Both the position numbers and the translations under genes were made by a program. Below are positions 18,131 through 44,500 of a stretch of DNA of 64,000 bases, piece after piece. The DNA comes from Trichoplax adhaerens (taxonomy: Eukaryota > Animalia > Placozoa). The stretch is from positions 62,001 to 126,000 of the forward strand of contig NW_002060943.1 of assembly GCF_000150275.1 (NCBI RefSeq). The letters are read 5' to 3'. The stretch's first letter is position 1, and the number at the start of each line of letters is the position of its first letter. The notes below the pieces were generated by a model. That model ran no database searches. It worked only from the letters and a program-made list of their open reading frames with translations, and was not told the origin of the DNA.

Positions 18131-19252
18131 TTACGTAACATTATTAGCTGGTACCTGTGGTCGATTAGAAACAGGCCGAATCTTTTGCAAATTTCTCAGT
18201 GAACGTTGAGAAATATTTGTAATACGCAAAAAAATAAAAATAAATGGGTCAATTACACAGTTAGAGTAGGATAATAATGTCGCAATTGGCCAATATAGAG
18301 AAAGCGACTCAAAGTTAAATGTTTGAAATAGGGCACAAACTAAAAGAAAGGTAATGGGAAGATAAACAACAGCATTAGTGAGAACTATGCAAGCCAGCAT
18401 AACATTAATTCGATGTTGTGTTTTATAAACAAGTTCTGACGTATGTCTTCGAAGACTTTTTCGCAATCTGCAGCTAATTTTAATATATAAAATGATACTT
18501 GCAATGCAGGATGCAGTATTCATAAAAACTTCAAAAGCTGACAAGTATAAAATGAAGCCTACTGTTACCGGCTGGCATAAATGCACAATAATATTGTATT
18601 GAAATATGAAGTTAGTCTGCTGAAGGATCCATTTCATCATAAAATCGGAGCCAATAGTGATAGTTAATGAAAGAATTAAGCTTACTAACCAACCGAAACA
18701 AATGAATAATTTTGTGGCATTCATATTAAATTTTTGACCATGAATTGGATGATAAATAGCCAGATAGCGTCGAATCGTAATGAAAAGGGTAAACATATTA
18801 GCACAACCTAATCCAATTTGGCTAAAAAACCGAGCAGCAGAGCATAGATGATTGATGATCCATGTGTCTTCTAAGGCAGTAATATTGCCTAGGTGAGGAC
18901 TTAAATACAGGTTTCGATTAATAGCCTTACTACTGTTCAAGGTACCGTTAGAAACGTAATTTGCTCTGAGGAGGGATATTAGGTCTCCACTATTCATGAT
19001 ACTAAAGTAAATACTGCTGCCTAAATCTGCTAGGGCTAAGTGTAATAATACTAACAGCGCAGGGCTATTTCGAATGCTAAGGGTATTAAATCTTTTATTT
19101 CTTTGCAATTGTAAGCCCTTTCGTTGTCGGCTAGATAGCAACAATGATAATATAACAAATATATTACCTAAAACACCAAATATACCCAAACTCCAAGATA
19201 TAATACGAAGAGAATTGTATTTTAAATATACAGTTTGATTATAATTCCGCAT
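18131..19252 (-). CDS. Rhodopsin-class orphan GPCR with LGR/RXFP-like 7TM, no ectodomain found
   Basis: 373-aa ORF with 7 hydrophobic segments; LRIISWSLGIFGVLGN (TM1), HLALADL (TM2), C..ARF and ITIRRY (TM3), YLP (TM6), NCVIDPFIF (TM7). Splice acceptor at 19310-19311 with the frame open from 19309, so an upstream exon exists or existed. Confidence 0.92.
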   Translation of the reverse strand: MRNYNQTVYLKYNSLRIISWSLGIFGVLGNIFVILSLLLSSRQRKGLQLQRNKRFNTLSIRNSPALLVLLHLALADLGSSIYFSIMNSGDLISLLRANYVSNGTLNSSKAINRNLYLSPHLGNITALEDTWIINHLCSAARFFSQIGLGCANMFTLFITIRRYLAIYHPIHGQKFNMNATKLFICFGWLVSLILSLTITIGSDFMMKWILQQTNFIFQYNIIVHLCQPVTVGFILYLSAFEVFMNTASCIASIILYIKISCRLRKSLRRHTSELVYKTQHRINVMLACIVLTNAVVYLPITFLLVCALFQTFNFESLSLYWPIATLLSYSNCVIDPFIFIFLRITNISQRSLRNLQKIRPVSNRPQVPANNVT

Positions 19253-23923: not shown

Positions 23924-25065
23924 GATAGTTAGCTTATTAAGTCAGTTTTCATATGCTTTTATTTCACGATTGTGAACAGTTTGTACCATAAAAATTAACG
24001 AATTAATTAAATTACGTTGAATCGTTAAAACATTCTAAGTAGTAACCAGGGACGTTTAGTAGCTGCCAGCATAGAGCTAGAAATTGCACTGTCTTATAAA
24101 GTAGTTTATTAAGCGTCCAACTTGTGGTCGTAACAATAATATTAAAATATCTGCAGCAGCTATATGAGCATATCATATGAATTTAATGGCGCTGCTTGAC
24201 CAACTAGGTAAATTAACATTCAACAATTTCCGGCCTTTATCAATATAACGGCTAATAGAAAATTAATCTGCAAATACGATGGAGATTGTCTTTGCAGGTG
24301 ATCTTTAAAGGATATTATATCAAAATTTTATTTGCATCACAAAGCTAAGATTTCAGCGAAGATGATAATATGCTGTACAGTATCAATTGCAAGGTTAAAT
24401 TAATTTTAACTTATAAGAAGTAAAACTCTTTTAAACTACATTGTACATGACCGTCTAGTCTTGTGTAAGATTAGCCTAAAAGACTGAATTAATCAACACA
24501 AACGATAAAATATGTAATTTATGTTTATCAAACATTAAAGTAATATACAATGTATCGCACAGCTGCCTAAACCTATATTTGTTGTTAACTTTACATCTGC
24601 ATTTATAATCGAAATATGCTACAAAAGGAGTGTACCGTCTACAGATGATCTGAAATATATTGTACATACCAAACCTAATTAGCAAAAATTTATTAATAGA
24701 ATACAATGTAACAATAGAGTTTAAATTAAATTAGTAAACTATTACGAAGAATATAAGTTGAAATACAAATTTTCGTAGATGATTTACCGACAAAGCAGTA
24801 TTGGAATTCAATATTCAATATATAAAATCATTTTAAGATTAAAATGTTTTTGGTAACGATTATAGCACAAATATGATACACTAATTCCTCTGTCAATAAT
24901 TATAATTAAATGTAAACAAAACATTTGTATTTTTGCCTACTATTGCAATGGTTCATTTCAAAAAAGCAATAGCCTCTTCCTGAAATTCCTCAGTCACTAA
25001 TTGAAAGAGAAAATTACGTGATTATGATGCAACTAAGTAATTGTATGCTGCAAACGCTGCTGTAA

Positions 25066-28000
25066 TCATTTAATTTCCAAGTACTGTGCATACCTTTCGC
25101 TGGATAAATTACATTCTAGATCTGTTGGCGTGTAGACATCGCCATCATCGATGTCCGTTGAATTACTAGAAACAGATGGAATGCTGGCATAGTCATGGTC
25201 TTGCGAAACAGTTTGCTGGGCAAAAGGAGATGCGCTATCGACTACCATAGACGGAGAAATATTCAATAGACAGTCATCGGACATTTCCTCTTTCGTGGCG
25301 ATATTTACTGGATTATCAGACTCTTCACACAGCAATTTCGAATCAGATTCCTGAGATACCATGCCTGGAGAGCTTTGTGAGGTATCATACTCTTCATCTT
25401 TACTGTCTGATTCAATATCGCTATTTGCTGAAACTATATTACTGTCAATACCTTTATTTACCGTCTCGGAATTGGATTCTGTATCAATTGTACGTTTACG
25501 TGTTTGACCGCATTCGATAGCACCATCAATTAGATCGTCATATTCTTGGAAATTGTAGTTTATTTCCTTTCGAGCACGATTTGATCGGCGACTAGTAGAA
25601 TCATCATTCTGAAGCTATAGAAATAATAAATGATATTACAGCGCCGTAACAATACATATTGCATATCATGAAGCGAATTTAAAAATGCAATTATATGAAA
25701 AACCATTTCTGACATTGATAATATTGCTATAATCAAGACCATTCATTTTCATTCTAGTAAGAAGGCGAAATAAGCTCACGTTAAATATAACGGTAAACGA
25801 TTACTTAATTTTCATTGGCAGTTTTACTAACCGTCTGCTCGCTCTTTCGAGAGCTCTTTGCTTATATTCTAACTTTGTAATGTTATCTTTAAGATTTTTG
25901 GCAAGATTGATCTGAATTAAGAAATACCGCAAAGTAAACCTATGCTTAGCCATCTTCAATTAACCTTTACATTATCTTATAATATCAAGAACGTATAATA
26001 TCTTGTTTATACATTTTAACGATGCCTCAATAAAGTAGGGGATAGTTTTATTTCCTACTTTCAAGTTGTCAGTATCTGCATAATCTGTAATTGTACAGAA
26101 AATAAACAATCCAGTTACCTCATCGCAAAACGGGCAGTAAAAGTTGCCATCAGGAATTACAAATAGCGGAGGTCGAAGACAACTCATATGATATCCAGCA
26201 TTGCATGAATCACACAAAAGAATCTAAAAGCCAAACATAATTAGCTGTTATTGGTAGATTCCGCAAATACAATTACTTTACAAGAAAATGACAGTTTCTG
26301 TTATTTCAAGTAAAAATTTCTAACCGTTGCTGGTGATGCACAACTAAAGCAAGCCGTGCAAGGCTCATCCGCATCATTTTCCCAATCATCTGAAGCACGC
26401 TTTCTAGATTTTTTAACAAACTTACGAGCATCTTCGCGTGGATTCAACTGTATGCGATCAGATAATATTTCATAGATACTACATAATTGCTCGTAGTTTC
26501 TATAGTATTAAAATACAATAAAACTGATTTAATCTTCATATCTATTCCAACTTGATAAACTCCTTCACTCGGATAACTTCACCTGCAAACCACTGTCCAT
26601 GTGGAACTATCATCATCATCCTCTTCTACAGCATACAATCGAAGATTACATTCTTCATCCTAATTTTTTACGCAAAATATCGATAAGGAAAGGTTATTTG
26701 TACATGATAATACAAATAATTAATGGTGGAACGGTTAAAACTGAGGCATTCTTGCATATTTAATTTACAAGAACTTAGCACAAATTACATTGCAAGGTTA
26801 CTTAAATTTTACACGTAATGATGTCAAAATTTGTTATCTGTAAACTGAATGTGAAGATATTGGTATCATACGAAGTATCTCTTGTTAGAATAGTTTGACA
26901 AGAAACATACTAATAGTTACAACAAATTAAAATCTATTTCATGGAGAATGGATAGCATAAACCTTACCTGCTGGTACCAATAAACTAACCCAAAGCGATC
27001 TCTGCCTATTGGCTGCTGCCGCAATTCCTTAGCAAGGAATGGTCTAATGTTCGTTTTCAGTTTTAGATTTTTGTCAAATTGCGCTTCACAAAGCACCTAC
27101 AGTACAAATAAAGTTCATATTTAATTAGATAACGTTTATTATAGCATGTTGTTAGCATGTTTACTTGTACAGTTGTAAACCCGGATAAAAAGGCATCTGA
27201 ATAAATTTTACTGCTTATAGCAAATAATCAATGCACGAGTAACATACTTTTGTCACAAAAATTTTACTCTTGAGTGAAAATCCATCATAGTCAAATTCTT
27301 CCATTTCCCATAATACTTTTTTTTCGCCGTCGTATTCTCGTGCTAGCTGCAAAAGAGCAGGTGCAGGTTACCAGAGTAATATAACTAACAGCCGCAAGAA
27401 CTAATTAAGTATGCTAAAAGTGGTGACGTATATAAGCTAAATCGCTTAACTTTATGCGTCGTTTGCTAATCTAAAGTGATGTTGGTTAACAAGCCTCTTA
27501 AACAACCTCAATAATAAATAAATAAAAGGATGCTGCTCTGGTGAATGATTCACTTCTGAGTTAGTAAAATAATTTTCACTTATACTTCTCATGGTTACTC
27601 TTACAATGCAGGTCTTCTTAACGCCACTAGTAGATCAACGAATCGTTTGATTCATTGGAGTCATTATTACAGTTCATATAGCTATATAGTATCAATGTAT
27701 GAATGCACAGTCTAAATCCTATTTAACTTGCATGAACATGTGCGTACCTAAAGGCTGTTGTAATTTTTCATCAGCAATGAACCGTGATAAAACTGCAACT
27801 ATTTGAAAAGGTTATGATTTCCTTAGCTCATTTACGCATTATAAATTAATAATACCGATATTCTTCGTAATCATACGTATTATAATCTATTTATGGCGTT
27901 TCAGGTAAAGTTGATCCTGCATTCGATTTATAACTATGGTCATCCTGTAATTGCATAGCACTGTAACCTCAATTAAGAAAAATTAAGTAGTAGTATCATG

Positions 28001-29457
28001 CTTCCATCGACGTCCTGGAATTGTACTGAGTTCGAGTTGCAATGTTCTATTACAGATCCAGATCTACTACGAATGCTCACACGCGGTCAATTCATGGTAA
28101 GTTGGATATCGTTATCGACTGCGCTAATTCATGTATTGCAGTATTCTTGTGACATCAGCAAGAATACGATCGCACCAAATGCTACAGATTGAAAAGATGG
28201 TGCAACTGCCTACACGCTTATCTAGTCAAATTGAAATTAACCGCATTTGAAATTAGAAATGATACGTGATGATGACAAATAGGTTTAACGAATTGCGTCA
28301 ATGTGTGATTCTCTATTGATGCAGGCGCAAAGTTACAAGTAAGGTATGCAAAATATTGGTTAGAGAGGATGCAGAATGGTTGGATATGCAAACATAGTCA
28401 TATAGTACAGTACTGTAGAAGGGTAAAATTAGACATTAAGTGTATAAAACCAAGCAAAATATATAACGTAGATAGTATGCATATTAAAGTGGTGATATCC
28501 AATAATCTACTTACAGCGATGACCTTATTCTTCCAGGAGTTTCCATTAGGGGCAACGTTTATCCCAATTGCTCGTAACAATTTGACATGAACATCCACTG
28601 CATATTGTGCATCTTCATCATCCGCTATAAGAGAAATTTGGAAATCAAAACATATTAAGAAATGAATTACACAATACTCCATGACATCATGACATAATAT
28701 GCAGAAGACCGAGATTAATGGAATGTGGGGTGCGACATCGGAGGAACTAGAGCACAAACTAGTAAGTCCTCGTGTGTTCTCATAGTTGCAAAGACTGCTG
28801 CAATCAACATTCCTGCAGCATCACCGTGCTTCACTATACAGTGTAGAGTTACAGTAGCCAGAAGCTGGTAACTTAGCCTTGAGCATGCATTTAATAAGGA
28901 AAACAAAACTATACTACATACTCTAGAAAGCAAAATACAGTATTGAAATTCGTGGAACGTGCAAGATATGACATCGAAGTAAATTAATTTACTAAGGCAC
29001 AAAATAGTCTTTCCTTGCGTGCACCTGTAGTTGCAAAGATTCGCGTAATCAACATGATCACAATGTTCCTGCACTTACCGTAGCCAGAAGATGTTAACTT
29101 AGCATCGGGCATGCATTTAAGTAGTACAATAAAGTACAAAAGGTAATATACGAGACTAGACCTCACGATGACAAACTGACGCTCGCTATAGTATGGTAGT
29201 ATGTCGATTTTACCTGACAATGATGTATTGATTTGCAACACGAATTGACACTTGCCTTGATTGCTTCCGCTGTGTAAAGCGAGAAAGCCTCGGTCCAATA
29301 TTTCAATTTGTAGCTGTGCTAATTTACAGTAACTACTGAATAACTTTAGATAGGAACATATCACCGCAAAATCTGGATAGATAGAGGCAGACCAACGACG
29401 CTGATTATGGACTGTTGCTGCAGATGTCAAGATCATGTTTTGATTCGTATTCGCCAT
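25066..29457 (-). CDS. RSF1: Remodeling and spacing factor 1 ortholog (DDT/WHIM region + PHD finger), 10 exons, 521 aa
   Basis: Exons 29457-29256, 28624-28515, 27346-27248, 27096-26968, 26659-26583, 26499-26325, 26223-26119, 25911-25832, 25753-25714, 25614-25066; phases all compatible (1566 nt). RSF1 motifs PDFAVICSYL, VDVHVKLLRAIG, LCEAQFDKNLKLK, LRQQPIGRDRFGLVYWYQ, PHD CTAC..CDSC..YHMSC..CPFC, RRSNRARKEINYNFQEYDDLIDGAIE. Confidence 0.9.
28783..29160. repeat. Diverged direct repeat inside RSF1 intron 1
   Basis: tagttgcaaaga..aatcaacat..ttac(a/c)gtagccagaag..taacttagc..gcatgcatttaa occurs at ~28783 and ~29028. Confidence 0.75.
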
Positions 29458-32400
29458 AATAATATTTTGCTAGCTGAGCAATGGAATCCCTCTTGTTCTT
29501 GCAGGGTTAGTTTCAGCTTACACTAGTACTCTAGAAGTCAATAATTGATTGACAATAATATTTTCTTCTATCGATCTTTCTGATCACCTCTTGTTATTAG
29601 CTAATCTTGAATGATATTCATAAATTACTTACATGACCGAAATCAGCACTTCTACCAGCTCCATGGAAAGTGCAAGTAAGCAGTAGCCATGTTGACTTGA
29701 CTGCCTCAGCCGGACTGACTTTGGTCGAGTTGGCGAATACAGTATCTACTGAAGGGTACAGTACATTCTACACTAGAATCTACAGTATAATGCACTGTAA
29801 GCAACAGATCGTAAAACTAAGTCCAGGCAGGCTGTCCCCTATTGCCAGTACAGGAGAGGAAATTTCCAATTCAACTGGCCAATAGTAGTAAACAAATGAA
29901 CGGTATCGTACGCTATACTATACCAGTATGATATGATCAAGCACAGTCTGACTGGGTAGAGCAATCATGGCGGGAATTACGAAAATGATGCATATCTTTT
30001 TCCAGAAAGTCCAGCCATTTTTTGATGTTGTAGAAAGGATAAAAGATCAAAAATACATTTTGTGGTTCCCGGTCATGGACTTTGCAGAGAAATCTAGATT
30101 CTACAGTAGTAGTCTATGTACGAATCCACGATACACTTCATAGAGGTGCTTTGGTACAGCATTATGATTATGTGCTATATAATGAATTAGTCTTAAGATG
30201 TCCACCGATGTCACACCGATAGTGGACATTTGACAGGAAATGCTCCATTTCGGAGTTGTAATAAGTGCGTTTTACAATAACTATCTTAGTCAAATGGTAT
30301 TTTTCTTAATGGCTTTTATTACAAGGTTTTAGGAACAGTAGAGCAATAATTGATTACTACAAGAATCTAGTCTAAAATTGAAAGTATTCCGAACTCAAAG
30401 CGAAGTGAACTCTCTTCTCCCTCGTCAGCTCATCTCTGCAGTTCTTATATATGTTATATACATTTAGTTAAATCCATTTTATGACAACTTGATAAATCTA
30501 CAATCAGACATGAGTCAGTAAACAAAATACTTCTCTCTAATAGTACATCATTATTTTCTACTATCGAAATCATTCTCCTTAAGATGTCACTACTCTTCTA
30601 TTAACGTCTAGCCCCTTTCTGCGAAGGGGATCTTAACAACTACAATGTTTCTAGCTACATAAATCTTGTACCATAATTAGTCAACTGGCTACTATTAGTT
30701 CTAATATAGTAGTTTAGCAATCATCTAATATTAGCTTCACGATAATATCGATCTATTCAAAGTTACCTAACTATATCAAATATAGCTATCCGTATAATCA
30801 AATATGCCTACATCACTACAGGAGTTAAAAGAGCTTTACTTTGAGCTTTCCTCTACGGTTTTACCCTCACGATTTCTTACTGTATACGTACATCACTCGA
30901 GTACTTGGGTCGCAGCGCTACTCAAAATGGCCGACCATGTCGCTTGCTGTCGGCCTACAGCAGTTGACTGCAATCATTAAATTAAATAAAATTCAATACC
31001 TTAGTGCGTAAATGACAACTCCAGCTAGTGGTAGACTAGGACAGCTCGAGTCTCTATAAATCAAATGCAGTGATGGTGGATTATGGTTCATAAAATAGGA
31101 ATGAATTGATCAAAGAATTGCATAACACTTTGTTGGATAGAGTGCGGTATAAAATATTGACAATTTGCTTGCTGTACATCGAGCATACGGTATTCTCTTA
31201 TGGATTGCAATAAAAGTAAACTTTTATCTTAAATTAGTTTTGCCCAACTTGATTCTAAGGTAGTTGAATACAATTCAATACATATACATATAGATAGATA
31301 GATAGCCTTCCTTATTACTGGTAGCAATCAATTCTAATCGCTCGCTTCATTTATACAGTACTATATAATGATAATAATGCTAAGGACGAGACTTACAACA
31401 ACAAGGAATAGGTAATCTAGTGTATAAATAAATGTATCATTAGACAATAATTTCAAGGCAACAATTACCTGTTCAAAGAGAAATGAAGAATCTAGTTGTA
31501 GTGTAAACATCCCATATATAAGATAGAGTTACTAACTTTTGTTGACTAATTAATCAGAATCAGGCTTGTTGAACAAATGTCAACATCACTATTGATAGGT
31601 GCTAAGGGAAATTATGTGAGAATTAACTCATTAACGAAATGACTGTAGATTATATTAATGTTTGCATAATAATCAGCTATGATTGGTTAATGGATTGCTA
31701 TATTAAAATAATGTTACATCACACCTATACTCTAGAGTTTGATGAGCTGGTATGGTAAATTCAACGATTTATATTGGAAATAACGCTAAGCCGATTCTGT
31801 ATAAATAGAGAGAGATATATCAAGATAGTAGTCTGTCACCTATTTTACTGCTTCGGTTTTATTAGATCCGCTCGCAAGCCTTTAAAGGTATGTAAGAAAC
31901 ACTACTATTACCCGAACCACAATTAGAGCTATTAGACGAAGGGTAATCTTATAGGACATACTGTAGGTCAATATACTTATATTAATTTCAGGCAACAATT
32001 ACTAATAATGGGTGGGTAATTTAGTATAGGATATATTAAAGTAAATGCATTCAATAACTTCAAGGCAAAATTACTTGTTAATAATAGTAATCTGTAAGGA
32101 TAAGTCAATGTATCAAGACCATAATTCAAGGCAATTACGTTTTTATTTTGCATCTACTAACGACCAAGTGAGAGAGTGAAAAGTTTGAAACGCAATTATA
32201 GACACGGTAGTCATAATGCGATGAACACAATATATTAAATTTGAGCGTAAAGAGGAATTTTTTGCCTAACTTTATTATGGGTATTTGATTAGAATTAAGA
32301 TATAGCCTATCTTATTACATGTAGCAACCTGTTTTAATCACTCTTATCATTATAAGATAACATAATATTAAACATGAGACTCATGTCAATGGGAAATGAG

Positions 32401-33169: not shown

Positions 33170-35783
33170 CTATATTCCGGTTTCTCTGTTCATGATCGAA
33201 TAGATGGGTTTGTAATTCTGTAACTGAAATTAAAGTAAAATATTACGCTATCATCAATTTAACTCTAACATTTTTATGCAATATCATTGGACAATCTATT
33301 CATTTGACCTATTTATAAGACATTAACCAGAGCTAAAAATAGCAATTTACAGCATTGGCTTCATTATATGCTAAAGTATTAATCTAGAACATGTTGATGC
33401 AGAATCTTGAATATTTATTCGCTATAGACCATGCTTGCTTAGCCACTATACTGTACTACAGCTTATGAATTCTATTTCGCATTTATTACATCATCACAGA
33501 TTCCCCTAGATTTAACTAATTCAACTCAATCTCATCAAATTATTTCATCGTAGTTATTGCATATGAACTAAACGATAAATGCTATACTGAAATAATTTGC
33601 AATTTCAATATCTCATTTTCATGGCAGTAATAGTGACTGCATCAATAATCGCTTACCCATTCTTGAGTTGCTTTCCATTGACATCTATTATCAACCGGTG
33701 GGCTGGCATTATTCTGAAAATTTTCATTACTTGTTACATTATTATCTGCCTTTAACTTGCATAATACGGCCAGTTCCTCACATAATAGCTTGATACTGTT
33801 ACGATCATTCATCAGTAAATTAACTTGGCTGGGATATCGTATGGCATCATGAAATACTTCAACTGTTAAAAATTTGCCCAATAATGCTTTAATTCTTTTG
33901 CCCTAGATATTTTACATATAATTACACAAGTACAACAATATCATTAGCAATTTTTCAATATAATTCATGATTTTAAATAAATTTATAACTTTATACAGTC
34001 ACAAGATCGCACTACAACACTATATGTGACATAACATTCAGGTATTTAAGTGGATGAGTTCATTGTACTGCCCTATGTATTGCAAAATGATTCTGTTAAG
34101 TACCAATATAATATTGATGCAAGAATAATTCTATTTATGACGCACAAGGCCAAATTCGAAATTAATGACTGAATAAAGAAAGTATTACAATTACTCTAAT
34201 ATATTACGGTAGGTATTTCATATTGTAGCTTAAAACGATACTAAAATTCACGTTGTACTCGGCAAGAACTAAATTTTCCACATAATTATAGCATTTAGTG
34301 TAATAAATTAGAACATGTTACATTACCAATTAAACTAATTTACGATCAAGATTAAATGATACTCGTGTAGTTATGATCGAATTATAAATTCGCATATGAG
34401 TTCGATAATAAAAAAATAATAGACTGTAATATATCACTAATCATATTGTCATCTATTGATATTCGCTCTTGCATACATATTATAAATAAAATCCATGATT
34501 TACCTTGCTAGAAATAACAATATATACGCTGTCAGTGCTGATACTACCATGGATAATTAAATGTGATTGTAGTGAATTGACGGCAATTTCAATATCTTGA
34601 ACAATGTGAGTAATACTTTCAGGAGTTAAATATTCAGATTGGCAAGAAATGAAGTCCTTTAATGTACATATATCTTCGCCAGATAAGGCGTAACATACTA
34701 ATCTAAAAGATACGATAGTGTATATTACAATAGTTTTAGATGAATGACTTGAGCAAACTTTCCTGATTCATGAAATATATATTTAATATACCGACGCATA
34801 GGTTAAATCTAAACAAGAAATTTAGTTTATCACTCAATATTAGATCATAAAATCTCAACAGAGATACTTAACATGATATAAATATAGTCTATGACCTACA
34901 GTTCCTTATCTAGTTGTATCTTGAGTTTTTTGGTATCTATATTACACTTTTCGCCTTCCCTAAACCATTTATGTTCAGCAATGTTATGTAACTTCCAACT
35001 GTATAGCTTCATATTACAATAAAACTGTTTCTCTTTCTCCCAGAATTTCCTTTCCTTCTTCTTGTAGCAACTCAGCCAAGCCAATATACTTTCATTATCA
35101 TGTTGGCTTGTTAGTCTTACCTTCAGACAGTTCTAAAAAATAACATTTATTCTTAAATTTCATATCTATCTTGATCAAATAAAGAAATATAGCCAAATTA
35201 CGCTATAACATGATTAAAACTGGATACTAGATTGCGGGAATAAATCATACAATTATTACTTATTCATTTACACTACTCAATAAAGATATACAAGGCCCTC
35301 ACTGTAAAGTAAGAAACCTTACTTTATTCTGTTTAAATTAATGCATTTGTTCGAAATAGATTAATTAAGATAAGCCATTCTATTAGCTATTCGACATTAG
35401 AAAGTAGTTAGTTTGTTTATGAATACGCACAAAATAAGAATTAGATTACTAAATTAAGTTATTTATTTACTAGCTCTAGTAATAACTGGAAATCTTGAAC
35501 GATAGAAATCTTATAAAAAAACAGAATCACTATCATTTCATAAATGATGCAAACGGCTAAGGTACGCCTAATTCAATACCGGTATATATTTTATTAAACA
35601 AGGAGGTCAATAACAAAATCGGACGAAAACATCCTTAATTAAATTCAAATTACGACATTATTAAAATATTTCATCTTGTTACCATATTCTCTAGCAATTA
35701 ATCACGTACTTTTGAGATACTAGATGTCACTGATGATGGTAAAATCAAAATTTTCTTATATTGGTGGAATTGATTTATGCAAT
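33170..35783 (-). CDS. Protein-kinase-fold pseudokinase exons (probably the C-terminal part of the LRR-GPCR gene, otherwise a separate gene)
   Basis: Exons 35783-35710 (phase 1-0), 35132-34900 (0-2), 34702-34504 (2-0), 33902-33657 (0-0), possible last exon 33223-33170. Translation follows kinase subdomains II-IX: AWLSCYKKKERKFWEKEKQFY..LHNIAE, TLKDFI..ITHIVQDIEIAVNSLQSHLIIHGSISTDSVYI, KALLGKF, DRNSIKLLCEEL. VAIK Lys, HRD Asp and DFG Asp are all replaced. Confidence 0.65.
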
Positions 35784-37505
35784 CTAATCAGTTCAATCAG
35801 GTTTATAAAAGAAAAAATTACGATCAGTACAAACTCTCTTCAAGGCTTTAATTAACATCAAGCTAGCGGTTTAGTCAATAGTTAATTTATCCTAGGAGAT
35901 ATTTGGTATCCATAACTATAGATTATAGTGGTATAGACTCTATGCTAGAGTAAAGATGATTATATACAGTAAGGTGTTGAGCTACTAATAAGGCTATAGG
36001 TAAAAATAGAACTGTAAATCATGCATTAGGATATGGTTAATTCATTGTACTTTGGCTGGTGTGAATAATGTCTACGTAAGTACTGTAGTCGTATCCATAT
36101 TGGATTAATGATGGTCCGCAGTAGAATAGTCTTTACTAAGAATAATTTAACTATGTGAAATATAAGGTATAAGGTTGCCATGCAGAATGTAGCTGCGAAT
36201 GCTACGAAAAGTATAGAAGCATGCAACTTTAGATTATTCTGTTAGTTCGTTCTTGAAGTTTTTAGTAGTAGTATTCGGCTAGAGTAGAGCTGTGTGTAGT
36301 TAATCTTTGTATAAGATTCAATAAAGCCCTTATTTTTCTAAAATTTGGAATCTCGAGATTGGTATATATCGCACTTCGATTTTAAATAATATGTGATTGA
36401 ATCCGTAATAACTTCTATTAATTTATTTTCAGTCTTAAACAATCTAGCAGTATATCATCAATTTATCTGCATATTCGATTTCGCTATTCTTCATAGAGAA
36501 TAATTGTCACACTAAACGCCTGTCTACCACATTTAGTTTACAGATAGGACAGACTTATGAGGAAATAAGGAAATAAAACAATTATAGTGAACTGTTTGGA
36601 ATTATGTGGCGTATGATGTTTATCTTCATATAGTACTGAGATATTAGGATAGTTCGATTTTATTAGACTCTAATATGTTGAGATACAGTGAATAAATTAT
36701 CGTGTTTAGAATTTTCAGACTGGACACTATTATTGTCAATCCTAGCCGTGTTATAGGTCCAAAGCTACAATATCAGTACAAATATAAATCCCTTTTAGGT
36801 GCACATATTATTACCATACTTAATATAGCTGGAACCTATCACCACCAGTTTACTAACACTATCCTACGGCTAAGACCTTGCTATATTGAATCGAAATAAA
36901 GCAATAATATTTAAGCTACAATTATTTAAATAATTTCTCAATAGAAAAGTAAAGAAAATAATTTTCAGATATAGAGTTTACTGATATTTACAAATAACAC
37001 TACACAAAGAAAATCAGGATTCTGCCATTTTCCGTTTAATATTCTTCTTGTTTTGAAATATCAAATAACTCTTCTAGTTTACTGCTGTAAGCTATCGAAA
37101 TATTCACTGGAATGTACGCATATAATTGCTTATTCAAATTCTTAAAATGTTAAACCAGAAAATTGATACTGTTTGTATGAGTCTATATTCCAAATCGCCT
37201 AAAGATTTCTGAAACATTGTGGATCTCAACTTTCCAATACTGCGACGAACTACAATTACTAGTACCTTATGTTGTAATTCTGATATGATTACTATTGCCT
37301 TGTTTCACATAGTTTTTGTATGGTAACATAACTTTGCGGGAAATACTAAAAGTGTGACACAGTATCAAGTTTAAAATATGTAATTTCCATATTTCAGCAA
37401 GACTATTCAGTAGAAATGCGCTGATATATGGTAATAATAAGTAAAGAACCTTATTTTTCCAAGAAGTCCAGCTAGATAATACGGGTACATCTAATTATGT
37501 CAATG

Positions 37506-38597
37506 CTAATAGAATATATAAATACCGTAATACTTACGCCTATTAAAGCTATGCGCTTGATTTTTCTTCAGATTATTACTTTTTTCCGATTCTGTTATGC
37601 GAAAGCAGCAAATGAAATTTCTCATAATTGTAATGGTATGATCAATGAATGTTTTAGTAAACATTGTGTATAGAATTGGATTGATACATGAATTTAAAGG
37701 CAAAGATAAGACGGCAACAAATGTTAATAAATGAGTCTCCAACTCAGATATAACTATGCCACGAATCAATACAATGTATAATGGTAGCCAACATATAAGA
37801 TCAGTAGCTACTATTGTAATCATTTTAGCAAGAACAATTTTTTCCAAAGTAGATATTTTCCGCCTGGCTGCTTTGCGTGATTTAGTTAAATCGATTATAA
37901 TGGTAAAATACATAATGCTAATGATGATCCAGATTATGAATGTGACACCACAGTAAGTTAGTAACCATAATTGCAAGATTGGATTTTCGATATTACCAGG
38001 TAGGCAGACAGCATTAGTGGCATATAAACGATTGTATGGAGGCTGATTATTGCCATAAAGTAGCGGTATGCCCGCAAACATAACTGCAATTGACCAAAAT
38101 ATAACGAAAATGAATATAACCAGTCGCCTTGACAACCGATAGTTATGAAATGGGTAGACTAAGAATAGAAAACGGTCTACTGTGATGATAAACATAATGA
38201 GTGTTGACATTAACGTCGAAACTGAGACAAGAAATGATGATACTAAGCAAAATGGACTCCTTAACCAAACTTCGTGATATTGGGAAAAGTGTCCGGCAAA
38301 ATAGACGTTAGCTGATGCGATAATAATTAAGTACAATCCCATCAATAAATCAGCAGCAGATAGATTAATAATTAGTGCTCTGACTATAGTATCATCTTTA
38401 TTTTAACACTTGCATGCCACATAATGGATAAAATATTTTCAATGATAGATAGAATACCAACAAGCCAAATAAAAATTCGTAATATTTCATGTGATAAAAT
38501 ATCATTACACGTTGAAAGGCTGAATTGATTAGGTAACGGTCGGCATATACTAATAGTCTTTGGGGCATGGCAACATAGATATTCTCGAGATGAAAAT
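37506..38597 (-). CDS. Hinge + 7TM exon of the LRR-GPCR (relaxin-receptor-like)
   Basis: ORFs 38384-38635 and 37506-38345 are two frames of one exon; adding one A to the A-run at 38401-38404 restores VKNKDDTIVRALIINLSAADLLMGLY. Confidence 0.92.
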
Positions 38598-41500
38598 CTA
38601 AAAATCAAAGTTACGCCTATTATATATAGAAACATCTTTGGCTATCTGCATTAAGAATTGCATTTCCTTCACATTACTAGGAAAATTAATTTTCGAAGTT
38701 AATCAAATACTATATTTAAGCTTGTTTCTTAAAGTTTAAATGACTTAAGCATTGAAAGATGTTAAAAATGACGTCGATTGAAATATATCGATAGCAAGTA
38801 ATATATAAGAGACATTTTTATCTCTTAAGTCGCACGATATTAAACTCATAATTAACCTATGATCCCAGAACTAAAGCAGGGATGGCTTAATTAAAGCATC
38901 CACTATACTGTACTGTAATGGAACTCTATTTTGTGCGGCAGGGGTTATTGACTGACCTATGATATTAATAATAATTGCTAAATAAGAATAGAATTTAGGT
39001 TACTTACTGTCACAAAACAGCTTTGCAACAAGATAACGCAATATACGATCAATAAGTCAATTCCTTGAACCATGTATCAAGGAACGATATCTGCACTATC
39101 ACAAACACTTTTTTGCTCAACTAGCAGACTATACAAAGACTTAGACGCCTCGTATTTTACGTTAAACACTAAGTTTGAGAATTCACTTTATTACACGATA
39201 TACTGCATTTATATACTATTCCTCAATAGCTCATGAGTCATAGTTAATACAATTAACATTGGAATCATTTACTGAATTAGATATTAATTTTAGCTACTGC
39301 TCCCTTAATGCAGACAACAGTATTTACGAACATAGACATGTAATGACTAATACAGAATAGTCAGATTACGATATGTCCTATCACGGAACATTTCCATGAT
39401 AATTTGCAATCTACCATAAGTAAATTACAATCACAATGATTGGAACTGTAAGTAGATGATTTGTATTTCCTATTATAACTATTAATTTCAGTATGTGTAT
39501 AAGTGTCACTGTCATAAAAAGTCAGTGCTATATTAAAACACAGTATATCCAAATTAGAAGTTAACTAAATAAGGATAGTCTAACAGAATTATCCTAACAT
39601 AGATATTTCTACTGTAATACAGTATATAACACTGTAACACTTACAGATCCGTTATTTCGCCAGCTCCAATTAATGAATATCTGGAGAATTGAATCAAAGG
39701 ATTGTTTTTTATGTTTCTGTGAAAATGAAATTGCAAGGATACAGAGTCGATTAAAATCTCAACTAGCCACAAACTTAGTAGATTTGAATGTGTAATCATT
39801 TTTATGGTCAATAAAATAGCGATTTCTCCAGGTAATAAATACCAAGAAACTTCTCTATTCACTAGTTTTGAATTCTTAAAGTTTCGAGCAGTAATCGTAG
39901 GGTATTTAATCATTATTAGACTGGATAAATCGGAGATTTCGTCAGGCAATAAATACATTGCAATTTATTATCTACTATTCTTGATTAAAATAATTTTCTT
40001 ACAGTTGTCGTAATTTTTTAAACCCCGCTAAACAGTATGGTCCAAGCGTCACGATGTTATTATCGTCGACACTCCTAAACAGGTATATTTTCGATTTCGT
40101 TAGCTAAATTTGTTTAATACCTTATGATCAATTTAATATTCTATAAAAATAAATGTTACATCAATGTAGAACTAAGCATATCTTTTAATAGGTAGATTTA
40201 CACGTACAAAAGTTCCAAATTTGAAGATGCAGCGTCAGGAGTTGTACATATATCAGTTATATTATTTCTATTAAGAAGCCTATGTCAAAATCATTTTTAA
40301 TAGAGCATTTATTAGCATAAGATATTCGAAATAAATTTAATCATTATGGTTAAACTAAAATAAAAGCATGGAGTTATGTTTCAAATTATGGTCAAGAATC
40401 GAAAAACTTGATTGAGTGATTATAGATACACTTACAGCTTTTTCAAGTTTGATAATTTTATCAAGGAGAAATAATCAGTATTTTGAAGCTGATTTTTATC
40501 GAAATTCCTAAATAGAAAGGATTGCATCAAGAAAGCGATAGTAATTTAATGGCACACTTTGAATTCTATCGCTTGGCAAAAATTGGTCTTTATTACATCA
40601 AATATAACAATTAAATATTAAAATCTTATATAGTATACATATGTGATTTTATCTAATCTGTGACAGTATTCAAGACTGTTCTCTATTTTATCTGAATTAA
40701 ATAACATAAAAGGTCTAAAAGATTGCTATCAATTTATTTAAAAAATTATAAAGGAAGTATTAGAAGTACGCCTTACAATCGATTGATATTGGCTAAAGGC
40801 GAAATACCTCCTAAGCCAATAGACTTGAGTTCACAATCTGATAATTCGCTTCAATATGAAAGTTATAAGAAGTTACGAATATTTATGTATACGCTACCGC
40901 TTGTAGTACTCCTTCTAAAATAACTAGAAAAAATCGATAAGTCAATATTTTAAAACTTACAGATGTCTAGTTCGGTATAATTTCCGTAGTATATTTTCCG
41001 AAAGTTGATCAAGGTCATTGCCACCTAAAATTCTGTTAACATTGGATGTAATTAATTTTATTAGTATTAGACCAATTTACCCCACCACGTCATTTATCAT
41101 TAATTGTTATATAATTTCTCAATAAAGAGTTTGAAAATACTCTACAGTTCAAAAAATTGTTTTCTTTCCGAAAATATCGGGACCAAATCGACAGCTGATA
41201 GGTTGGAATAACTTAGACCCCTAAAGGTTGCGATTTAATTTTATGTATGCTAAGAAATCTGGTATGCATTAATTTTAATATGTGCTACTTATAATATGAA
41301 AAACATAAACGTACTATGGTTAAGATGTTTATAAATTATGAATGCATAATTTATAGTAAAGCAGTAAGTAATACTGAATTGTTAATATCCATAATAAAGA
41401 ATTTACTTATAGGTTGTTAATAAGCCAGTGATTTGATATTGATTACTACAGAACGATGAATTGACTATTTCAATAATTAAATACAATTTCCAATAAATTG

Positions 41501-44500
41501 GAAATTACCAGTAAGATAATTGTATAGGAACTCGTAGCAAAGGAATTGACGGATACTTTGTAATTTATAATTATATACTTACAGGCTTATCATATTGACT
41601 AGGTTTGTGATCAAACTCAGATTAACCCCTGACAAATTATTGCTATCTAGATATCTGTAACATAAAATAGACAAGAGTCACTTTTATGTAAACCAGTAAG
41701 TGATTTTACATGATTTTCTATTCTTTAAATGCCGAGATGTGTAAGATAACGATGGCTTCTTGCGCATAATTTTAAAAAATTTAATATGGTAGATATTATG
41801 TGATTCTACAGTAAAGGTATCACAAAACGTAACTTTATTTGTGAGCAACAGTTATACAAAGACCAACACAGGATACAGTAGTGTATCAACATCATTTCCC
41901 ACTTCTAAAAATGGAATAGTTTGCAGATTTCACTTTCGCTTATATGATTAAAGCGATCTTATACATGCGCTGCTAAATATATAACTACACGATAGAGTTT
42001 TTAATCCATTGATATTAATTAACTTATTTCCATTTTATTATTTGTATATCAATCGCCAATTTTTTATGGAAATAAAATTAAGGTTTGTTTCAATTGCTCT
42101 AGTTATTTTGAAAAGATTTACTTACAATTCTTGGATATGAGCAAGCTCTTTAAATAAAGCGGCATTGATTATGGACTTGTTAAATTGGCAGTGTTTCATT
42201 TTCCTACGAAGCGACAAATTATGAACTTGGCTATGTACATGATGTTTGATATTCATAGGCGATATCATTTTTGGCATAAAACTGGTTTATACTAAGCAGA
42301 AGCTAACACCAGAAATATTGTAAACGATGACTAGCAAGAAAAAAGATTATTACAATGTCCGAAGAGATCTGAAATGGCTAAAGAGACGTAAATCAATAGA
42401 TTGCAAGTTAGGATTATTATTCATGTATCTATAATCAGGATAAAAAACATTAAATAAATTCAGATATTTAAAACCTTCAGATTTTTACTCATATAGTATA
42501 GTAACTGTGCACACTGCGATAAATCTTACAGTTCCTCGAGAAATGGAAGCTGCCTAAACGATTTTTCTTTCAACCGGGTTAAGTAACGACCTCCAATCGC
42601 CCTTTGGTATTATATCATTTTATTATACATTCAAAGCATTAAAATTAAGTTTATCAACTTTCGATTTAGCTATAAGAACTCGATTAAAATATGTTTATTA
42701 TATCAAAAAATATTCCTTACAATTTCTGCAGCCTAATTAATTTTACAAAAGCAAAATCAGGAATATCAGAGTATTTATTAGAAGCTAGATCCCTAGAGAA
42801 GGAGCAATTAATCGTTAAATTTATAGCCCTAAATATAACAGTATTATATCGTCTTTAAGTAATGGCTGATTGCAACAGAAAATATCTACATATCGTGAAA
42901 AATTCGAATAATTGCTTAAAATAACCACTAGTACTTTCATTTTTGTATCATTCAATCAATCAAACAATTCATCCAAATGCAAACAGCTGTTCGATTATAA
43001 CCAGCTTAGATTAATGCAAATAACAAGAGCCTCAATTATAAGGTTAATGAACTAATTTATACAGGTTCTAATAAACTTACAGTTCTTTTAAAATTATAGT
43101 ATTTTCGAAAAGATCAACAGGAATTTTTTTCAGTTGATTCCCAACCAAAAACCTTCATTTTTCAAATTATTGTTGATTTGCCAACATATGCAGATTAGTA
43201 GATTATATCAGTCGTAGTATCATCACCTGCTAGAATATCTATGAATCATGTGATCATACTTACAAGTGCGATATTGAAGAATTTATACCGAAAGCTCTTT
43301 CATGAATACTATTTAGTTTGTTATTGCTTAAAGTCCTATTTGAATAGAAGTTCTTCGTTATCTTAGTCAGTATTTGATACCCGTGCGATAGCATTTTATA
43401 TTAAGTTCTAAATTTGACAAATTTCCAATCAAAGCAAGAAATTTCAATTATATATTAGGAATAAATGATTGTTTTTACTGGTAATACTAATGATTATAAA
43501 TCTAACTTTGCTATTCATGTGATTCATTAGCCGACTACCCTATTTCTTACAAGTGCAGTGGTGCAAATGGCGAGAAAGTATTCAGCCCAAGATACTCTAT
43601 AAAGTTGCTCGTCAACCTCCTAGACATAAAATTGTAAGTAAACAAAATCATGGACTGATATCGGTCAAGAGTTTCCTAAAAATCACCTTCCATTAATCAT
43701 ATTGAATGATAAGGTTTATGATTTCATATGACTGAATGGATTTTGAAATTAAGCGAATACTTTTCAAATTCATTTAGGAAAAGTTTACAGCTTAGCATTG
43801 CTGTAAAAATATCGGATCGTTAAAGAATGCCATTCTAGTCCAAGTCACGACACACTTTATTTCACAAATACAATTTTTTCTAAAAATTACCCCTAGCAAC
43901 TGCTAGCATATCAGTACTGTAGCATCTCTTCATCTTCAGACAAATAAAATACCTATTTATGCGTGATGCTTTAGAAATTTTATGAAACTCACTATAGATA
44001 AAGTACAGAAATATTCTAAATAACTATCACGATTAATTTGGTGAAGCTAAACAATTAATTGCAATAAAAATGAGAAATTAAATTGATAATTATATCCATA
44101 ATTAGACTATGTTTCTCCTGAGTTCAAGTATCCTTACTTACACTATATTTAACGACCTCATGTCTTTGAAAGTTCCAGGCTCTAGAATCGATATTTTGTT
44201 GAAAGATAACGACCTACGGATGAAAATATCTGTTAGGTTGTCTAATCTGCATCAGGGTACTACAAAGATTTTGGCTAGTTTTGTAGCGACATTATAAGTT
44301 CTCTCGATCATGGATATTTATCTCAGGGCAATTTGAAGACTTTTAAATGATAATTTATTAAATTAACATAAAAATAGTCTAAAATAAGTAACTACGGTTT
44401 TGTACACTTATTATAAAGTAATATTGGCACACCCAAGATATGATAAGTACCGCCATGTTTCCTTTTGTCAAAATAAGAAGCTGACAATACATATATTTGT

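What the first reader, a model, noticed from the sequence alone, without database searches (positions are those of the whole stretch)
33170..38597. Candidate GPCR-pseudokinase fusion: 7TM tail splices in phase onto a kinase-fold domain
Seen: the RXFP-like 7TM exon has a consensus phase-1 donor (AGG C|gtaagt, 37537) just before its read-through stop. 1.75 kb downstream on the same strand a phase-1 acceptor (35783) opens four stop-free, phase-compatible exons for which I found no separate start exon. Established: the translation tracks kinase subdomains II-IX, with an N-lobe resembling TGF-beta-receptor/TKL kinases, but lacks the catalytic Lys, HRD Asp (HGS) and DFG (KFL). Inference: an LDLa-LRR-7TM-pseudokinase receptor, an architecture not found in characterised LGR/RXFP receptors and reminiscent of plant LRR receptor kinases. 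A nearer acceptor (~37346) would instead give a short tail, LFPAKLCYHTKTM*.
Basis: partly seen in the sequence, partly recalled or inferred. Interest (0 to 1): 0.82.

Follow-up and report, generated by a model that had tools for sequence, protein, structure and literature searches.

The report
LRR-GPCR gene with spliced pseudokinase tail
This Trichoplax locus is one of about 16 hormone-receptor-type GPCR genes whose last membrane-domain exon is built to splice onto exons for a catalytically dead kinase-like domain, a receptor design I found in no paper on animal rhodopsin-class receptors. This copy carries a frameshift in the reference assembly.

Summary
The window is Trichoplax adhaerens H1 (scaffold of 13.26 Mb). 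On the minus strand a rhodopsin-type 7TM exon (37538-38597) ends in a phase-1 GTAAGT donor just before its read-through stop. Five stop-free, phase-compatible exons (K1-K5, 35783 down to 33170) follow, and none has a usable start codon.

Every one of the 16 closest 7TM paralogs in this genome has the same K exons 0.7-4.3 kb downstream on the same strand. The 12 next-closest LGR loci have none. Six public gene models of five paralogous loci splice 7TM to K1-K5 at junctions of the same position and phase as in the window.

The tail is kinase-like. The K3 family profile hits kinases (PDB E 5e-5; hhalign E 4.6e-7). The AlphaFold model matches only kinases (VIA Z up to 10.4). The Lys, HRD Asp and DFG Asp are absent, so it is a pseudokinase.

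Three caveats apply:
- I found no transcript for this locus.
The H2 ortholog is intact.
- The LDLa module is unverified.

This scan already noted paralogous loci of this family elsewhere in this genome. I found no paper describing it.

The parts
37538..38597 (-). Hinge plus 7TM exon of an LGR (RXFP/GRL101-like) receptor. It has DRF and NPILY motifs and ends in a phase-1 donor (C|gtaagt). A 1-nt frameshift with an in-frame stop lies at about 38400-38404 in this H1 assembly.
   Evidence: Pfam 7tm_1 E 5.1e-28. TM1 and TM2-7 are in different frames. The H2 ortholog has one extra A and a T>G change there, giving one 376-aa ORF.
35784..37537 (-). Proposed 1.75-kb phase-1 intron between the 7TM exon and K1. 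It contains the read-through stop and the alternative acceptor near 37346.
   Evidence: The homologous introns in paralog gene models are 0.14-2.0 kb and have the same phase. H1 and H2 differ by 5 substitutions here.
35713..35783 (-). Exon K1 (24 codons including the split one). It is a linker plus the probable beta1 strand, with no Gly-rich loop. It enters at phase 1 and leaves at phase 0.
   Evidence: Sequence. K1 end plus K2 start align to a single continuous ORF in paralog L009. Equivalent 21-25-aa exons occur in models P0153, P0154, P0021, P0009 and P0007.
34900..35132 (-). Exon K2: kinase N-lobe (beta2-beta3-alphaC-beta4). It reads WLSCY where most paralogs have WLKxY, and it keeps the invariant WExE..FY motif. 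It ends at phase 2.
   Evidence: 17 further matches in the own genome. The family profile's only PDB kinase hit is the TGFBR2 N-lobe, residues 23-79, E 0.23.
34504..34702 (-). Exon K3: hinge, alphaD-alphaE, and a degenerate catalytic loop IIHGSISTDS in place of HRDLKxxN.
   Evidence: 19 further matches in the own genome. Profile against PDB kinases gives E 5.5e-5 and weaker. In 1.84 billion proteins, 295 hits reach E<=1e-3, and all 18 non-family hits I sampled are Pkinase proteins. hhalign gives probability 92.6%, E 4.6e-7.
33657..33902 (-). Exon K4: beta8, a degenerate DFG (GKF-L; GDF-S in two paralogs), and alphaF. It ends W|gtaagc at phase 0.
   Evidence: Family alignment A6. The phase-0 donor sits at the same column in 9 loci. 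AlphaFold places strands at 144-159 and a long helix at 176-205. This exon alone gave no PDB sequence hit.
33170..33223 (-). Exon K5: the last 17 codons plus TAG (LQNYKPIYS...). Its start resembles K5 of paralog L018 (LQHIKSVIYES...).
   Evidence: Sequence. K5 exons of 12-41 aa occur in the paralog models.
39644..39712 (-). Last leucine-rich-repeat exon of the ectodomain (23 aa).
   Evidence: tblastn with the H2 'Relaxin receptor 2' model P0153: 65% identity, E 1.6e-4.
42720..42788 (-). A further leucine-rich-repeat exon (23 aa).
   Evidence: tblastn with P0153: 61% identity, E 0.006. The H2 annotation has a 68-aa model at the matching place with a weak LRR_8 hit.

Best explanation
The window holds one member of a placozoan gene family of about 16 loci in Trichoplax adhaerens. 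These are type-C LGR (RXFP/GRL101-like) receptors with a leucine-rich-repeat ectodomain and a rhodopsin-class 7TM domain. About 35 residues after the palmitoylation-type CC motif, the cytoplasmic tail continues through a phase-1 intron into five exons (K1-K5, about 265 aa). These exons encode a divergent, C-terminally shortened protein-kinase-like domain.

Shown here:
- the exons and their splice phases;
- their homology and identical junctions in paralog gene models;
- co-inheritance of the 7TM and K modules across one well-supported 7TM clade;
- purifying selection on the K exons in recent paralogs;
- kinase-like sequence and fold;
- absence of the beta3 Lys, the HRD Asp and the DFG Asp in this copy.

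Inferred:
- The domain cannot phosphorylate. It acts as a receptor-tethered docking or allosteric module sitting under the G-protein/arrestin face of the 7TM bundle. It would couple ligand-induced 7TM rearrangement to a bound partner or to receptor dimerisation, as the kinase-homology domains of receptor guanylyl cyclases and JAK JH2 do.
- The N-lobe motif W..EK.FY and the single TGFBR2 hit suggest the module was captured from a TGF-beta-receptor-like (TKL) kinase once and then spread by tandem duplication.

In the H1 reference this copy has a 1-nt deletion between TM1 and TM2. The 99.5%-identical H2 ortholog is intact. So the gene was functional until very recently, or the H1 base call is wrong.
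For: Exons and phases.

Co-occurrence:
- K3 gives 20 matches, K2 gives 18, K4 gives 8.
- They lie downstream and on the same strand of every 7TM locus with at least 49% identity.
- None lies within about 7 kb downstream of the 12 next-closest LGR loci, and the positive control worked on all 19 fetched loci with K exons plus the window.
- The K-bearing 7TMs are split from those 12 by a branch with 100/100 support.

Fused public models: TRIADDRAFT_60495 (697 aa), TRIADDRAFT_60497, and H2 models RDD39592.1 'Relaxin receptor 2' (896 aa), RDD45091.1 (1129 aa), RDD41878.1 and P0154. The H2 models come from an evidence-based MAKER run with RNA-seq (PMC6057997).

Kinase nature:
- sequence: (Pfam sub-threshold on paralog models, E 2e-4 to 7e-4);
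- UniProt names two paralog models 'Protein kinase domain-containing protein';
- AlphaFold2 model of P0002: pLDDT 75, pTM 0.60;
- all Foldseek hits are kinases, probability 0.92-1.0;
- VIA Z 8.7-10.4 to CRAF, TBK1, WNK1, IRE1, Pragmin and IRAK4.

Selection: dN/dS is 0.24-0.38 over K2-K4 among recent paralogs.

H2 ortholog intact.
Against: - I could find no transcript or junction read for this locus. The word search with the K2-K4 model returned only itself.
- For this very locus the H2 annotators produced separate fragments: LRR pieces, no model over the 7TM exon, and a 'partial' K2-K4 protein with an ad hoc 7-aa start exon.
- The H1 7TM exon is frameshifted, and all four H1/H2 substitutions in it are non-synonymous. 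This fits relaxed constraint.
- Tandem duplication of a gene pair would also preserve adjacency.
- Pfam finds no kinase in this copy. The K4 profile and the single sequence P0003 found no kinase in PDB.
- Foldseek E-values are weak (5e-3 or weaker) and TM scores are about 0.3. The N-lobe segment 59-90 of the model is below pLDDT 50.
- The proposed scaffold function is pure inference.
Confidence: 0.78

Rival explanations
1. There are two separate genes. The receptor mRNA ends at the read-through stop, or uses the nearer acceptor (about 37346) for a 13-aa tail. K1-K5 (or K2-K5) form an independent small cytosolic pseudokinase gene that merely travels with the receptor in tandem duplications.
For: Public annotation of this locus in Trichoplax sp. 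H2 and of two H1 paralogs gives stand-alone K proteins: RDD39140.1, TRIADDRAFT_61685 and TRIADDRAFT_62588. No transcript evidence was available here. The intron here would be 1.75 kb.
Against: - K1 has no Met and its frame opens directly after a stop. K2 has no Met before alphaC. The H2 model needs an invented 7-codon first exon that is not conserved in paralogs.
- The 7TM ORFs of the clade all stop within a few codons after a phase-1 donor, and K1 always enters at phase 1.
- Six gene models of five paralogous loci join the two parts.
- The non-K LGRs carry ordinary long Ser/Thr-rich tails in the same exon, whereas the K-clade receptors do not.
Confidence: 0.1
2. The architecture is real for the family, but this copy is a dead gene in strain H1. 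The 1-nt deletion between TM1 and TM2 is genuine, so no full receptor-pseudokinase protein is made from this window. This overlaps with the best explanation and is not fully exclusive of it.
For: - There is a frameshift plus in-frame stop at 38400-38404.
- There are two adjacent differences from H2 at that spot.
- H1 and H2 differ by 4 non-synonymous and 0 synonymous changes in the 7TM exon, at about the intronic rate.
- This copy alone lost the beta3 Lys.
- Other family loci in H1 also show stops or frameshifts, for example L020, L021 and L026.
Against: - The site is an A-run in an 8x Sanger draft of a polymorphic diploid, so a base-calling or consensus error is plausible.
- The H2 ortholog is open over 376 codons.
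- K1-K5 are identical between H1 and H2. About 2.5 differences are expected at the intronic rate, so P is about 0.08, which is not significant.
Confidence: 0.3
3. The tail is not a kinase-fold domain. The motif resemblance is chance and the exons encode some other alpha/beta domain.
For: No Pfam hit for this copy. The K4 profile has no PDB hit. Foldseek E-values are 5e-3 or weaker with TM about 0.3. The region after alphaF is too short for alphaG-alphaI.
Against: - After the family itself, every sampled hit of the K3 profile in 1.84 billion proteins is a Pkinase protein, aligned at the alphaE/catalytic-loop position.
- hhalign E is 4.6e-7.
- K2 and K3 hit kinases colinearly, at N-lobe residues 23-79 and then about 100-160.
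- All listed Foldseek and VIA matches are kinases, with Z up to 10.4.
Confidence: 0.03

Closest known systems
Type-C LGRs: vertebrate relaxin receptors RXFP1/RXFP2 and invertebrate GRL101
   Same: LRR ectodomain with one repeat per exon, a hinge with the conserved Cys pattern, and a rhodopsin-class 7TM with DRY-like and NPxxY motifs. The best non-placozoan 7TM relatives are GRL101 and RXFP2 proteins at 25-32% identity.
   Different: All 24 sampled non-placozoan members end 9-96 aa after NPxxY and match no K profile. Here a tail of about 265 aa with a kinase-like domain follows. The LDLa module is not verified for this gene.
GPCR-kinase fusions: oomycete/amoebozoan GPCR-bigrams (GPCR-TKL), acanthoecid choanoflagellate GPCR-TKL/K, choanoflagellate and sponge GPCR-TK (PMC6033456, PMC5784254, PMC12716839)
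   Same: A 7TM domain followed in one polypeptide by a C-terminal kinase-type domain, here of probable TKL affinity. These fusions are thought to have arisen repeatedly. None has been functionally characterised (PMC12716839).
   Different: - Those 7TMs are not LGR/rhodopsin hormone-receptor types and have no LRR ectodomain.
- Their kinase domains pass standard detection and mostly look active, whereas this one is sub-threshold and catalytically dead.
[quoted passage not shown]
Receptor-embedded pseudokinase domains: kinase-homology domain of receptor guanylyl cyclases, JAK JH2 (from my own knowledge, not tested here)
   Same: A catalytically inactive kinase fold placed just inside the membrane that transmits or gates a receptor's signal. 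Both show HG-type degeneration of the HRD motif.
   Different: Those sit behind a single-pass receptor and in front of a catalytic domain. Here the domain is terminal and sits behind a 7TM bundle.
TGF-beta type II receptor kinase (TKL group)
   Same: The K2 family profile's only PDB kinase hit is the TGFBR2 N-lobe. They share the spacing of the beta3 Lys, the W..EK.(I/F)(F/Y) alphaC motif and the following NI motif.
   Different: E is only 0.23. The catalytic residues are lost, the C-lobe is shortened after alphaF, and there is no single-pass receptor context.
Plant LRR receptor kinases
   Same: An extracellular LRR ligand-binding domain and an intracellular kinase-fold domain in one receptor.
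   Different: The plant receptors are single-pass rather than 7TM and have active RLK/Pelle kinases. I saw no sign of common descent, so this is an analogy only.

Membership tests
Rhodopsin-class GPCR (Pfam 7tm_1) | 7TM domain scoring above the Pfam gathering threshold, with DRY-type and NPxxY motifs | tested here: met
   98.7 bits against a cut-off of 30.5, E 5.1e-28, for 37509-38402(-). DRF and NPILY are present. TM1 lies in another frame in this assembly.
LGR type C (RXFP/GRL101-like) | Leucine-rich-repeat ectodomain encoded upstream of the 7TM exon | tested here: met
   Two 23-aa LRR exons (39644-39712 and 42720-42788) are 61-65% identical to LRRs of H2 'Relaxin receptor 2'. The H2 model at this locus has a weak LRR_8 hit. 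Paralog models have LRR_8 at E 4e-24 to 8e-38.
LGR type C (RXFP/GRL101-like) | N-terminal LDLa module(s) | tested here: inconclusive
   The ORF at 62398-62586(-) has a CD.K.DC..G.DE..C-like motif but no Pfam hit at E<=0.01. It lies 24 kb upstream and was not linked to this gene. Paralog models show no Ldl_recept_a.
LGR type C (RXFP/GRL101-like) | Closest 7TM relatives outside the lineage are RXFP/GRL101 receptors | tested here: met
   With the closest paralog's model as query, hits were GRL101 (Biomphalaria and others) and relaxin receptor 2 (insects, mammals), at 25-32% identity over the 7TM half.
Eukaryotic protein kinase domain (Pfam Pkinase / PK_Tyr_Ser-Thr) | Score above the Pfam gathering threshold | tested here: not met
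   This copy has no hit, either exon by exon or as the public K2-K4 model P0002. Paralog models reach 14-22 bits, below the cut-offs of 23.1 and 31.7.
Eukaryotic protein kinase domain | Bilobal kinase fold | tested here: met
   The AF2 model has pLDDT 75. All Foldseek matches are kinases. VIA Z is 8.7-10.4 over 100-153 aligned residues, mostly C-lobe. The K3 profile against kinases gives E 5.5e-5 in PDB and hhalign E 4.6e-7. The N-lobe segment 59-90 has low confidence, and alphaG-alphaI appear to be missing.
Active protein kinase | Catalytic residues: Gly-rich loop, beta3 Lys, HRD Asp, catalytic-loop Asn, DFG Asp | tested here: not met
   - K1/K2 have no GxGxxG.
- beta3 Lys: Ser in this copy, mostly Lys in paralogs.
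- HRDLKxxN is replaced by HGSISTDS, and no paralog keeps the Asp.
- DFG is replaced by KFL. Asp is kept only in L009 and L020.
- The alphaC Glu is invariant.
Pseudokinase | Kinase fold with loss of at least one essential catalytic residue, conserved as coding sequence | tested here: met
   See the fold and residue rows above. dN/dS is 0.24-0.38 for K2-K4 among recent paralogs.
GPCR-kinase fusion proteins (GPCR-bigram type) | 7TM and kinase-type domain in one polypeptide | tested here: inconclusive
   For this locus there is only comparative evidence: identical junction phases and no start codon. For paralogs there are six fused public gene models. I saw no cDNA.
Choanoflagellate GPCR-TKL/K or sponge GPCR-TK families | Homology of the 7TM or kinase part to those families | not tested
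   No sequences of those families were in hand. The paper reports that their 7TMs cluster with no other eukaryotic GPCRs, whereas this 7TM is plainly an LGR.

The most novel reading that the evidence does not exclude
The tail is a captured TGF-beta type II receptor kinase domain that has lost catalysis but kept its partner surface. These placozoan LGRs would then recruit a type I TGF-beta/BMP receptor kinase or Smad-pathway component directly, giving a hard-wired link from a peptide-hormone GPCR to a receptor-Ser/Thr-kinase pathway that bypasses G proteins.
Probability: 0.08. Interest if true: 0.85.

Novelty: new variant of a known kind. Interest (0 to 1): 0.62.

Why it matters
GPCR-kinase fusions are known from oomycetes, amoebozoans, choanoflagellates and sponges, and none has been functionally characterised. 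The most recent survey I could read states that they were not found in other metazoan lineages (PMC12716839). Here an ordinary animal hormone-receptor type (LGR/RXFP/GRL101) carries a conserved, selected, catalytically dead kinase domain directly behind helix 8, in an expanded family of a nerveless animal that relies on peptide signalling.

If the fusion protein is made, it is a natural experiment in G-protein-independent or scaffold-mediated GPCR output. It is also a tractable case of how pseudokinase modules are recruited to receptors.

The domain escapes Pfam thresholds, which is probably why domain-architecture surveys missed it. For this locus, the H1/H2 difference gives a simple test of whether a family member is being lost.

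Tried and rejected
- Pfam on each exon alone found no kinase hit; only noise such as Asparaginase and YkoP.
- Pfam on the public K2-K4 model P0002 and on P0003 found nothing.
- The K4 family profile and the single sequence P0003 found no kinase in PDB.
- The strongest 'hits' of the K3 profile in PDB were TALE repeat proteins. These arise from summed matches of a short LTPE..V..I motif in every repeat and I rejected them as spurious.
- The word search with P0002 returned only itself. With the tail region of P0153 (633-896) nothing passed E 1e-3, so these searches give no information on other taxa or on transcripts.
- Alignment A5 (two whole domains plus exon fragments) misplaced the K4 fragments, so I discarded it.
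- H1/H2 divergence is too low to show selection on the K exons: 0 differences where about 2.5 are expected.
- Metagenome contigs with homologous K2-K4 arrays were too short to show an upstream 7TM.
My sample did not bear this out: 24 LGRs had short tails and no K-profile match, and none of the nine long proteins I checked among the top 150 representatives (those with the K3 match near the C-terminus) combines 7tm_1 with this domain.
The 7TM+K1-K5 spliced model of this window was neither searched nor folded. Whole-tail work used the public protein RDD39140.1, which equals K2-K4, so K1 and K5 are untested at fold level.

Full report
**What the window is.** The window is AT-rich (about 30% GC). 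It lies at C1414:62001-126000 of a 105.63-Mb assembly of 1414 contigs. The finding lies on the minus strand.

**Checking the observation.**
- The 7TM exon runs from 38597 to 37538. Its TM2-TM7 part (37509-38402) scores 98.7 bits, E 5.1e-28, on Pfam 7tm_1. It ends AGG C|gtaagt, which is phase 1, ten codons before the read-through stop.
- The acceptor at 35783 opens K1 (35713-35783; enters at phase 1, leaves at phase 0).
- K2 (34900-35132) ends at phase 2. K3 (34504-34702) ends at phase 0. K4 (33657-33902) ends W|gtaagc at phase 0. K5 (33170-33223) ends in TAG.
- K1's open frame begins directly after a stop and has no Met. K2 has none before the alphaC region.
TM1 (38387-38641) is in a different frame from TM2-7, with an in-frame stop in an A-run at about 38400. 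In all paralogs the two parts share one frame of 370-400 codons.

**Is the association more than chance?**
- Six-frame searches of the whole genome found 20 K3 matches, 18 K2 matches and 8 K4 matches.
- The 7TM query found 127 matches. Every locus with at least 49% identity has K2 and K3 (and K4 where detectable) 0.7-4.3 kb downstream on the same strand. That is 16 loci, one of which is probably an allelic duplicate scaffold.
- I fetched the 12 next-closest LGR-type loci (42% identity or less) with about 7 kb of downstream sequence. None has a K exon at E<=1e-2. The same search hit the window and all 19 fetched loci that carry K exons.
- Those 12 receptors carry ordinary long Ser/Thr-rich tails within the 7TM exon.
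- In a maximum-likelihood tree of the 7TM domains, the 11 usable K-bearing receptors are separated from the 12 others by a branch with 100/100 support and length 1.08. This fits one acquisition followed by duplication. The tree is unrooted, and loci with N gaps or broken frames were left out.
- The window groups with L009, L020 and L010.

**Are the two parts one gene?** I saw no cDNA. The evidence is comparative.
- A phase-1 donor lies within a few codons of the stop of the 7TM ORF in the window and in at least seven paralogs.
- A profile search of 1.84 billion representative proteins with the K3 exon family returned the public models of the family. Exact look-up named them.
- Six models of five loci are fused:
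  - TRIADDRAFT_60495 (697 aa), TRIADDRAFT_60497 (333 aa);
  - Trichoplax sp. H2 RDD39592.1 'Relaxin receptor 2' (896 aa), RDD45091.1 'GRL101-like' (1129 aa), RDD41878.1 (417 aa) and P0154 (747 aa).
- Three models are stand-alone K proteins, including RDD39140.1 (233 aa, 'partial'). That one equals K2-K4 of this window at 100% identity.
- Mapping the fused models back on the H1 loci shows the same chain everywhere: 7TM|K1 at phase 1, a 21-25-aa K1, K1|K2 at phase 0, K2|K3 at phase 2 (split Leu), K3|K4 at phase 0, K4|K5 at phase 0. The window has exactly these junctions.
- In paralog L009, K1 and K2 form one continuous open frame whose sequence aligns across the window's K1/K2 junction.
- The H2 models come from an evidence-based MAKER annotation using RNA-seq (PMC6057997). 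I cannot tell which junctions had read support.

**Is the tail a kinase fold?**
- Exon by exon, Pfam sees nothing. The public K2-K4 model also gets no hit, and paralog models reach only sub-threshold Pkinase / PK_Tyr_Ser-Thr scores (E 2e-4 to 7e-4).
- Family profiles do better. The K3 profile (11 paralogs) hits hundreds of PDB kinases at the alphaD-alphaE-catalytic-loop position, from E 5.5e-5 (MST1, CDKL3, GCN2, PAK, RAF, KSR, PknB). The higher-ranked TALE proteins are an artefact of a repeated short motif.
- In the 1.84-billion library, 295 proteins reach E<=1e-3. Beyond the family itself, all 18 that I sampled are canonical Pkinase proteins, many with several kinase domains.
- hhalign of the family alignment against one such kinase gives probability 92.6% and E 4.6e-7. 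It aligns IIHGSISTDS with IVHRDLKLEN.
- The K2 profile's only PDB kinase hit is the TGF-beta type II receptor N-lobe (residues 23-79, E 0.23). This places the family's WLKxY on the VAVK Lys and the invariant W..E on the alphaC Glu.
- K4 alone finds nothing.
- AlphaFold2 on the public K2-K4 protein, with a 24-row family alignment, gave pLDDT 75 and pTM 0.60. The strand/helix order is that of a kinase; residues 59-90 are below pLDDT 50.
- All Foldseek matches are kinases or pseudokinases (KKT14, ULK2, IRAK4, DAPK, RET, STRAD complex). Their probability is 0.92-1.0, but E is 5e-3 or weaker and TM about 0.3.
- VIA-align gives Z 8.7-10.4, with 100-153 residues aligned, mostly C-lobe (CRAF, TBK1, WNK1, IRE1, Pragmin pseudokinase, SYK, IRAK4).
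- The domain is short after alphaF, so alphaG-alphaI seem to be missing.

**Catalytic residues.**
- There is no Gly-rich loop.
- The beta3 Lys is Ser in this copy and Lys in most paralogs.
- The HRD Asp is absent in every paralog (HG[NSCDGF], once HRH).
- The DFG Asp is kept only in L009 and L020.
- The family is therefore a pseudokinase family, and this copy is its most degenerate kind.
- Among recent paralogs, K2-K4 have dN/dS of 0.24-0.38, with dS of 0.07-0.49. The exons are therefore selected as coding sequence.

**State of this copy.**
- The H2 ortholog contig (NOWV01000146.1) aligns to window 24000-45248 at 99.53% identity, with 99 differences.
- At the frameshift site H2 has one more A and a T>G change, giving an uninterrupted 376-codon ORF from the hinge through TM7 to the same donor.
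- So the H1 frameshift is either a recent strain-specific lesion or an error of the Sanger draft.
- The other four H1/H2 differences in the 7TM exon are all non-synonymous conservative changes. K1-K5 have no differences, but the expectation is only about 2.5, so neither figure says much.
- The H2 annotation is fragmented here: two small LRR models, nothing over the 7TM exon, and the 'partial' K protein. This suggests little transcript support at this locus.

**Distribution.**
- The 7TM half of the closest paralog's model finds GRL101 and relaxin-receptor proteins of molluscs, insects, cnidarians and mammals at 25-32% identity. Only Trichoplax proteins cover the tail.
- The 24 non-placozoan LGRs retrieved end 9-96 aa after NPxxY and match none of the K2, K3 and K4 profiles.
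- AT-rich metagenome contigs (ERZ23499115, ERZ27263980) carry K2-K3-K4 arrays with the same exon structure at about 35-55% identity. They presumably come from another placozoan lineage.

**Literature.**
[quoted passage not shown] It notes that none has been characterised.
- Papers on placozoan LGRs (PMC4079206) and on GPCR system evolution (PMC3971589) do not mention a kinase tail.
- Other loci of this family were already noted by this scan in this genome. I treated those notes as leads only.

**Verdict.** This is a member of a placozoan LGR-pseudokinase family. I class it as a new variant of the known GPCR-kinase fusion theme. Its function is inferred only: a tethered non-catalytic scaffold or allosteric module. 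In the reference strain this copy is either broken or mis-sequenced.

Noticed in passing
window 38396-38406 (minus strand): H1 and H2 differ here. H1 reads ...GTTAAAATAAAG... and H2 reads ...GTTAAAAAGAAAG.... H1 is therefore frameshifted between TM1 and TM2, while H2 has one 376-codon ORF.
   Followed up: yes
L020 = G000:C1390:634500-643500 (minus strand), the closest paralog: In H1 this paralog's 7TM exon also changes frame relative to the intact H2 model RDD39592.1, and it carries stops and an N gap in the long intron. So a second H1 copy of this subclade is broken or mis-assembled.
   Followed up: partly
L026 = G000:C1404:1073000-1082000: An orphan remnant of the K module: K3 and a K4 with an internal stop. 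No 7TM exon lies in the 5.7 kb upstream.
   Followed up: partly
L029, L030, L031 (ENA metagenome assemblies ERZ23499115 and ERZ27263980): Contigs of 28-30% GC carry K2-K3-K4 exon arrays of this family at about 35-55% identity to the window's, with Arg at the beta3 position. They probably come from another placozoan present in those samples.
   Followed up: partly
window 18134-19309 (minus strand): A single 392-codon open frame that looks like another, unrelated rhodopsin-type GPCR, with a Ser/Thr-poor tail ending in the same exon.
   Followed up: no
window 10835-11802 (minus) and 14104-14775 (plus): Two diverged, oppositely oriented copies of a Cys-containing secreted-looking domain of about 220 aa (motif YCDFESD.GFAWTL.ESL). 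I did not identify it.
   Followed up: no
window 24959-29462 (minus strand): The next gene downstream is a PHD-finger protein (H2 model of 534 aa, PF00628). This leaves about 3.7 kb between it and the K5 stop.
   Followed up: no
window 28000-30300: A local GC rise (0.39 against about 0.30) with long overlapping open frames on both strands. It partly coincides with the 5' part of the PHD-finger gene model.
   Followed up: no
window 1907-8871 (plus strand): Tandem Cys-rich one-module exons (CNCKCCSDCNCTSCKCTSC...), already listed by the scan as a candidate giant metallothionein. I saw them again in the ORF list.
   Followed up: no
window 62398-62586 (minus strand): An LDLa-like Cys/acidic motif ORF, 24 kb upstream of the 7TM exon. 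It has no Pfam hit at E<=0.01, and whether it belongs to this gene is unknown.
   Followed up: partly
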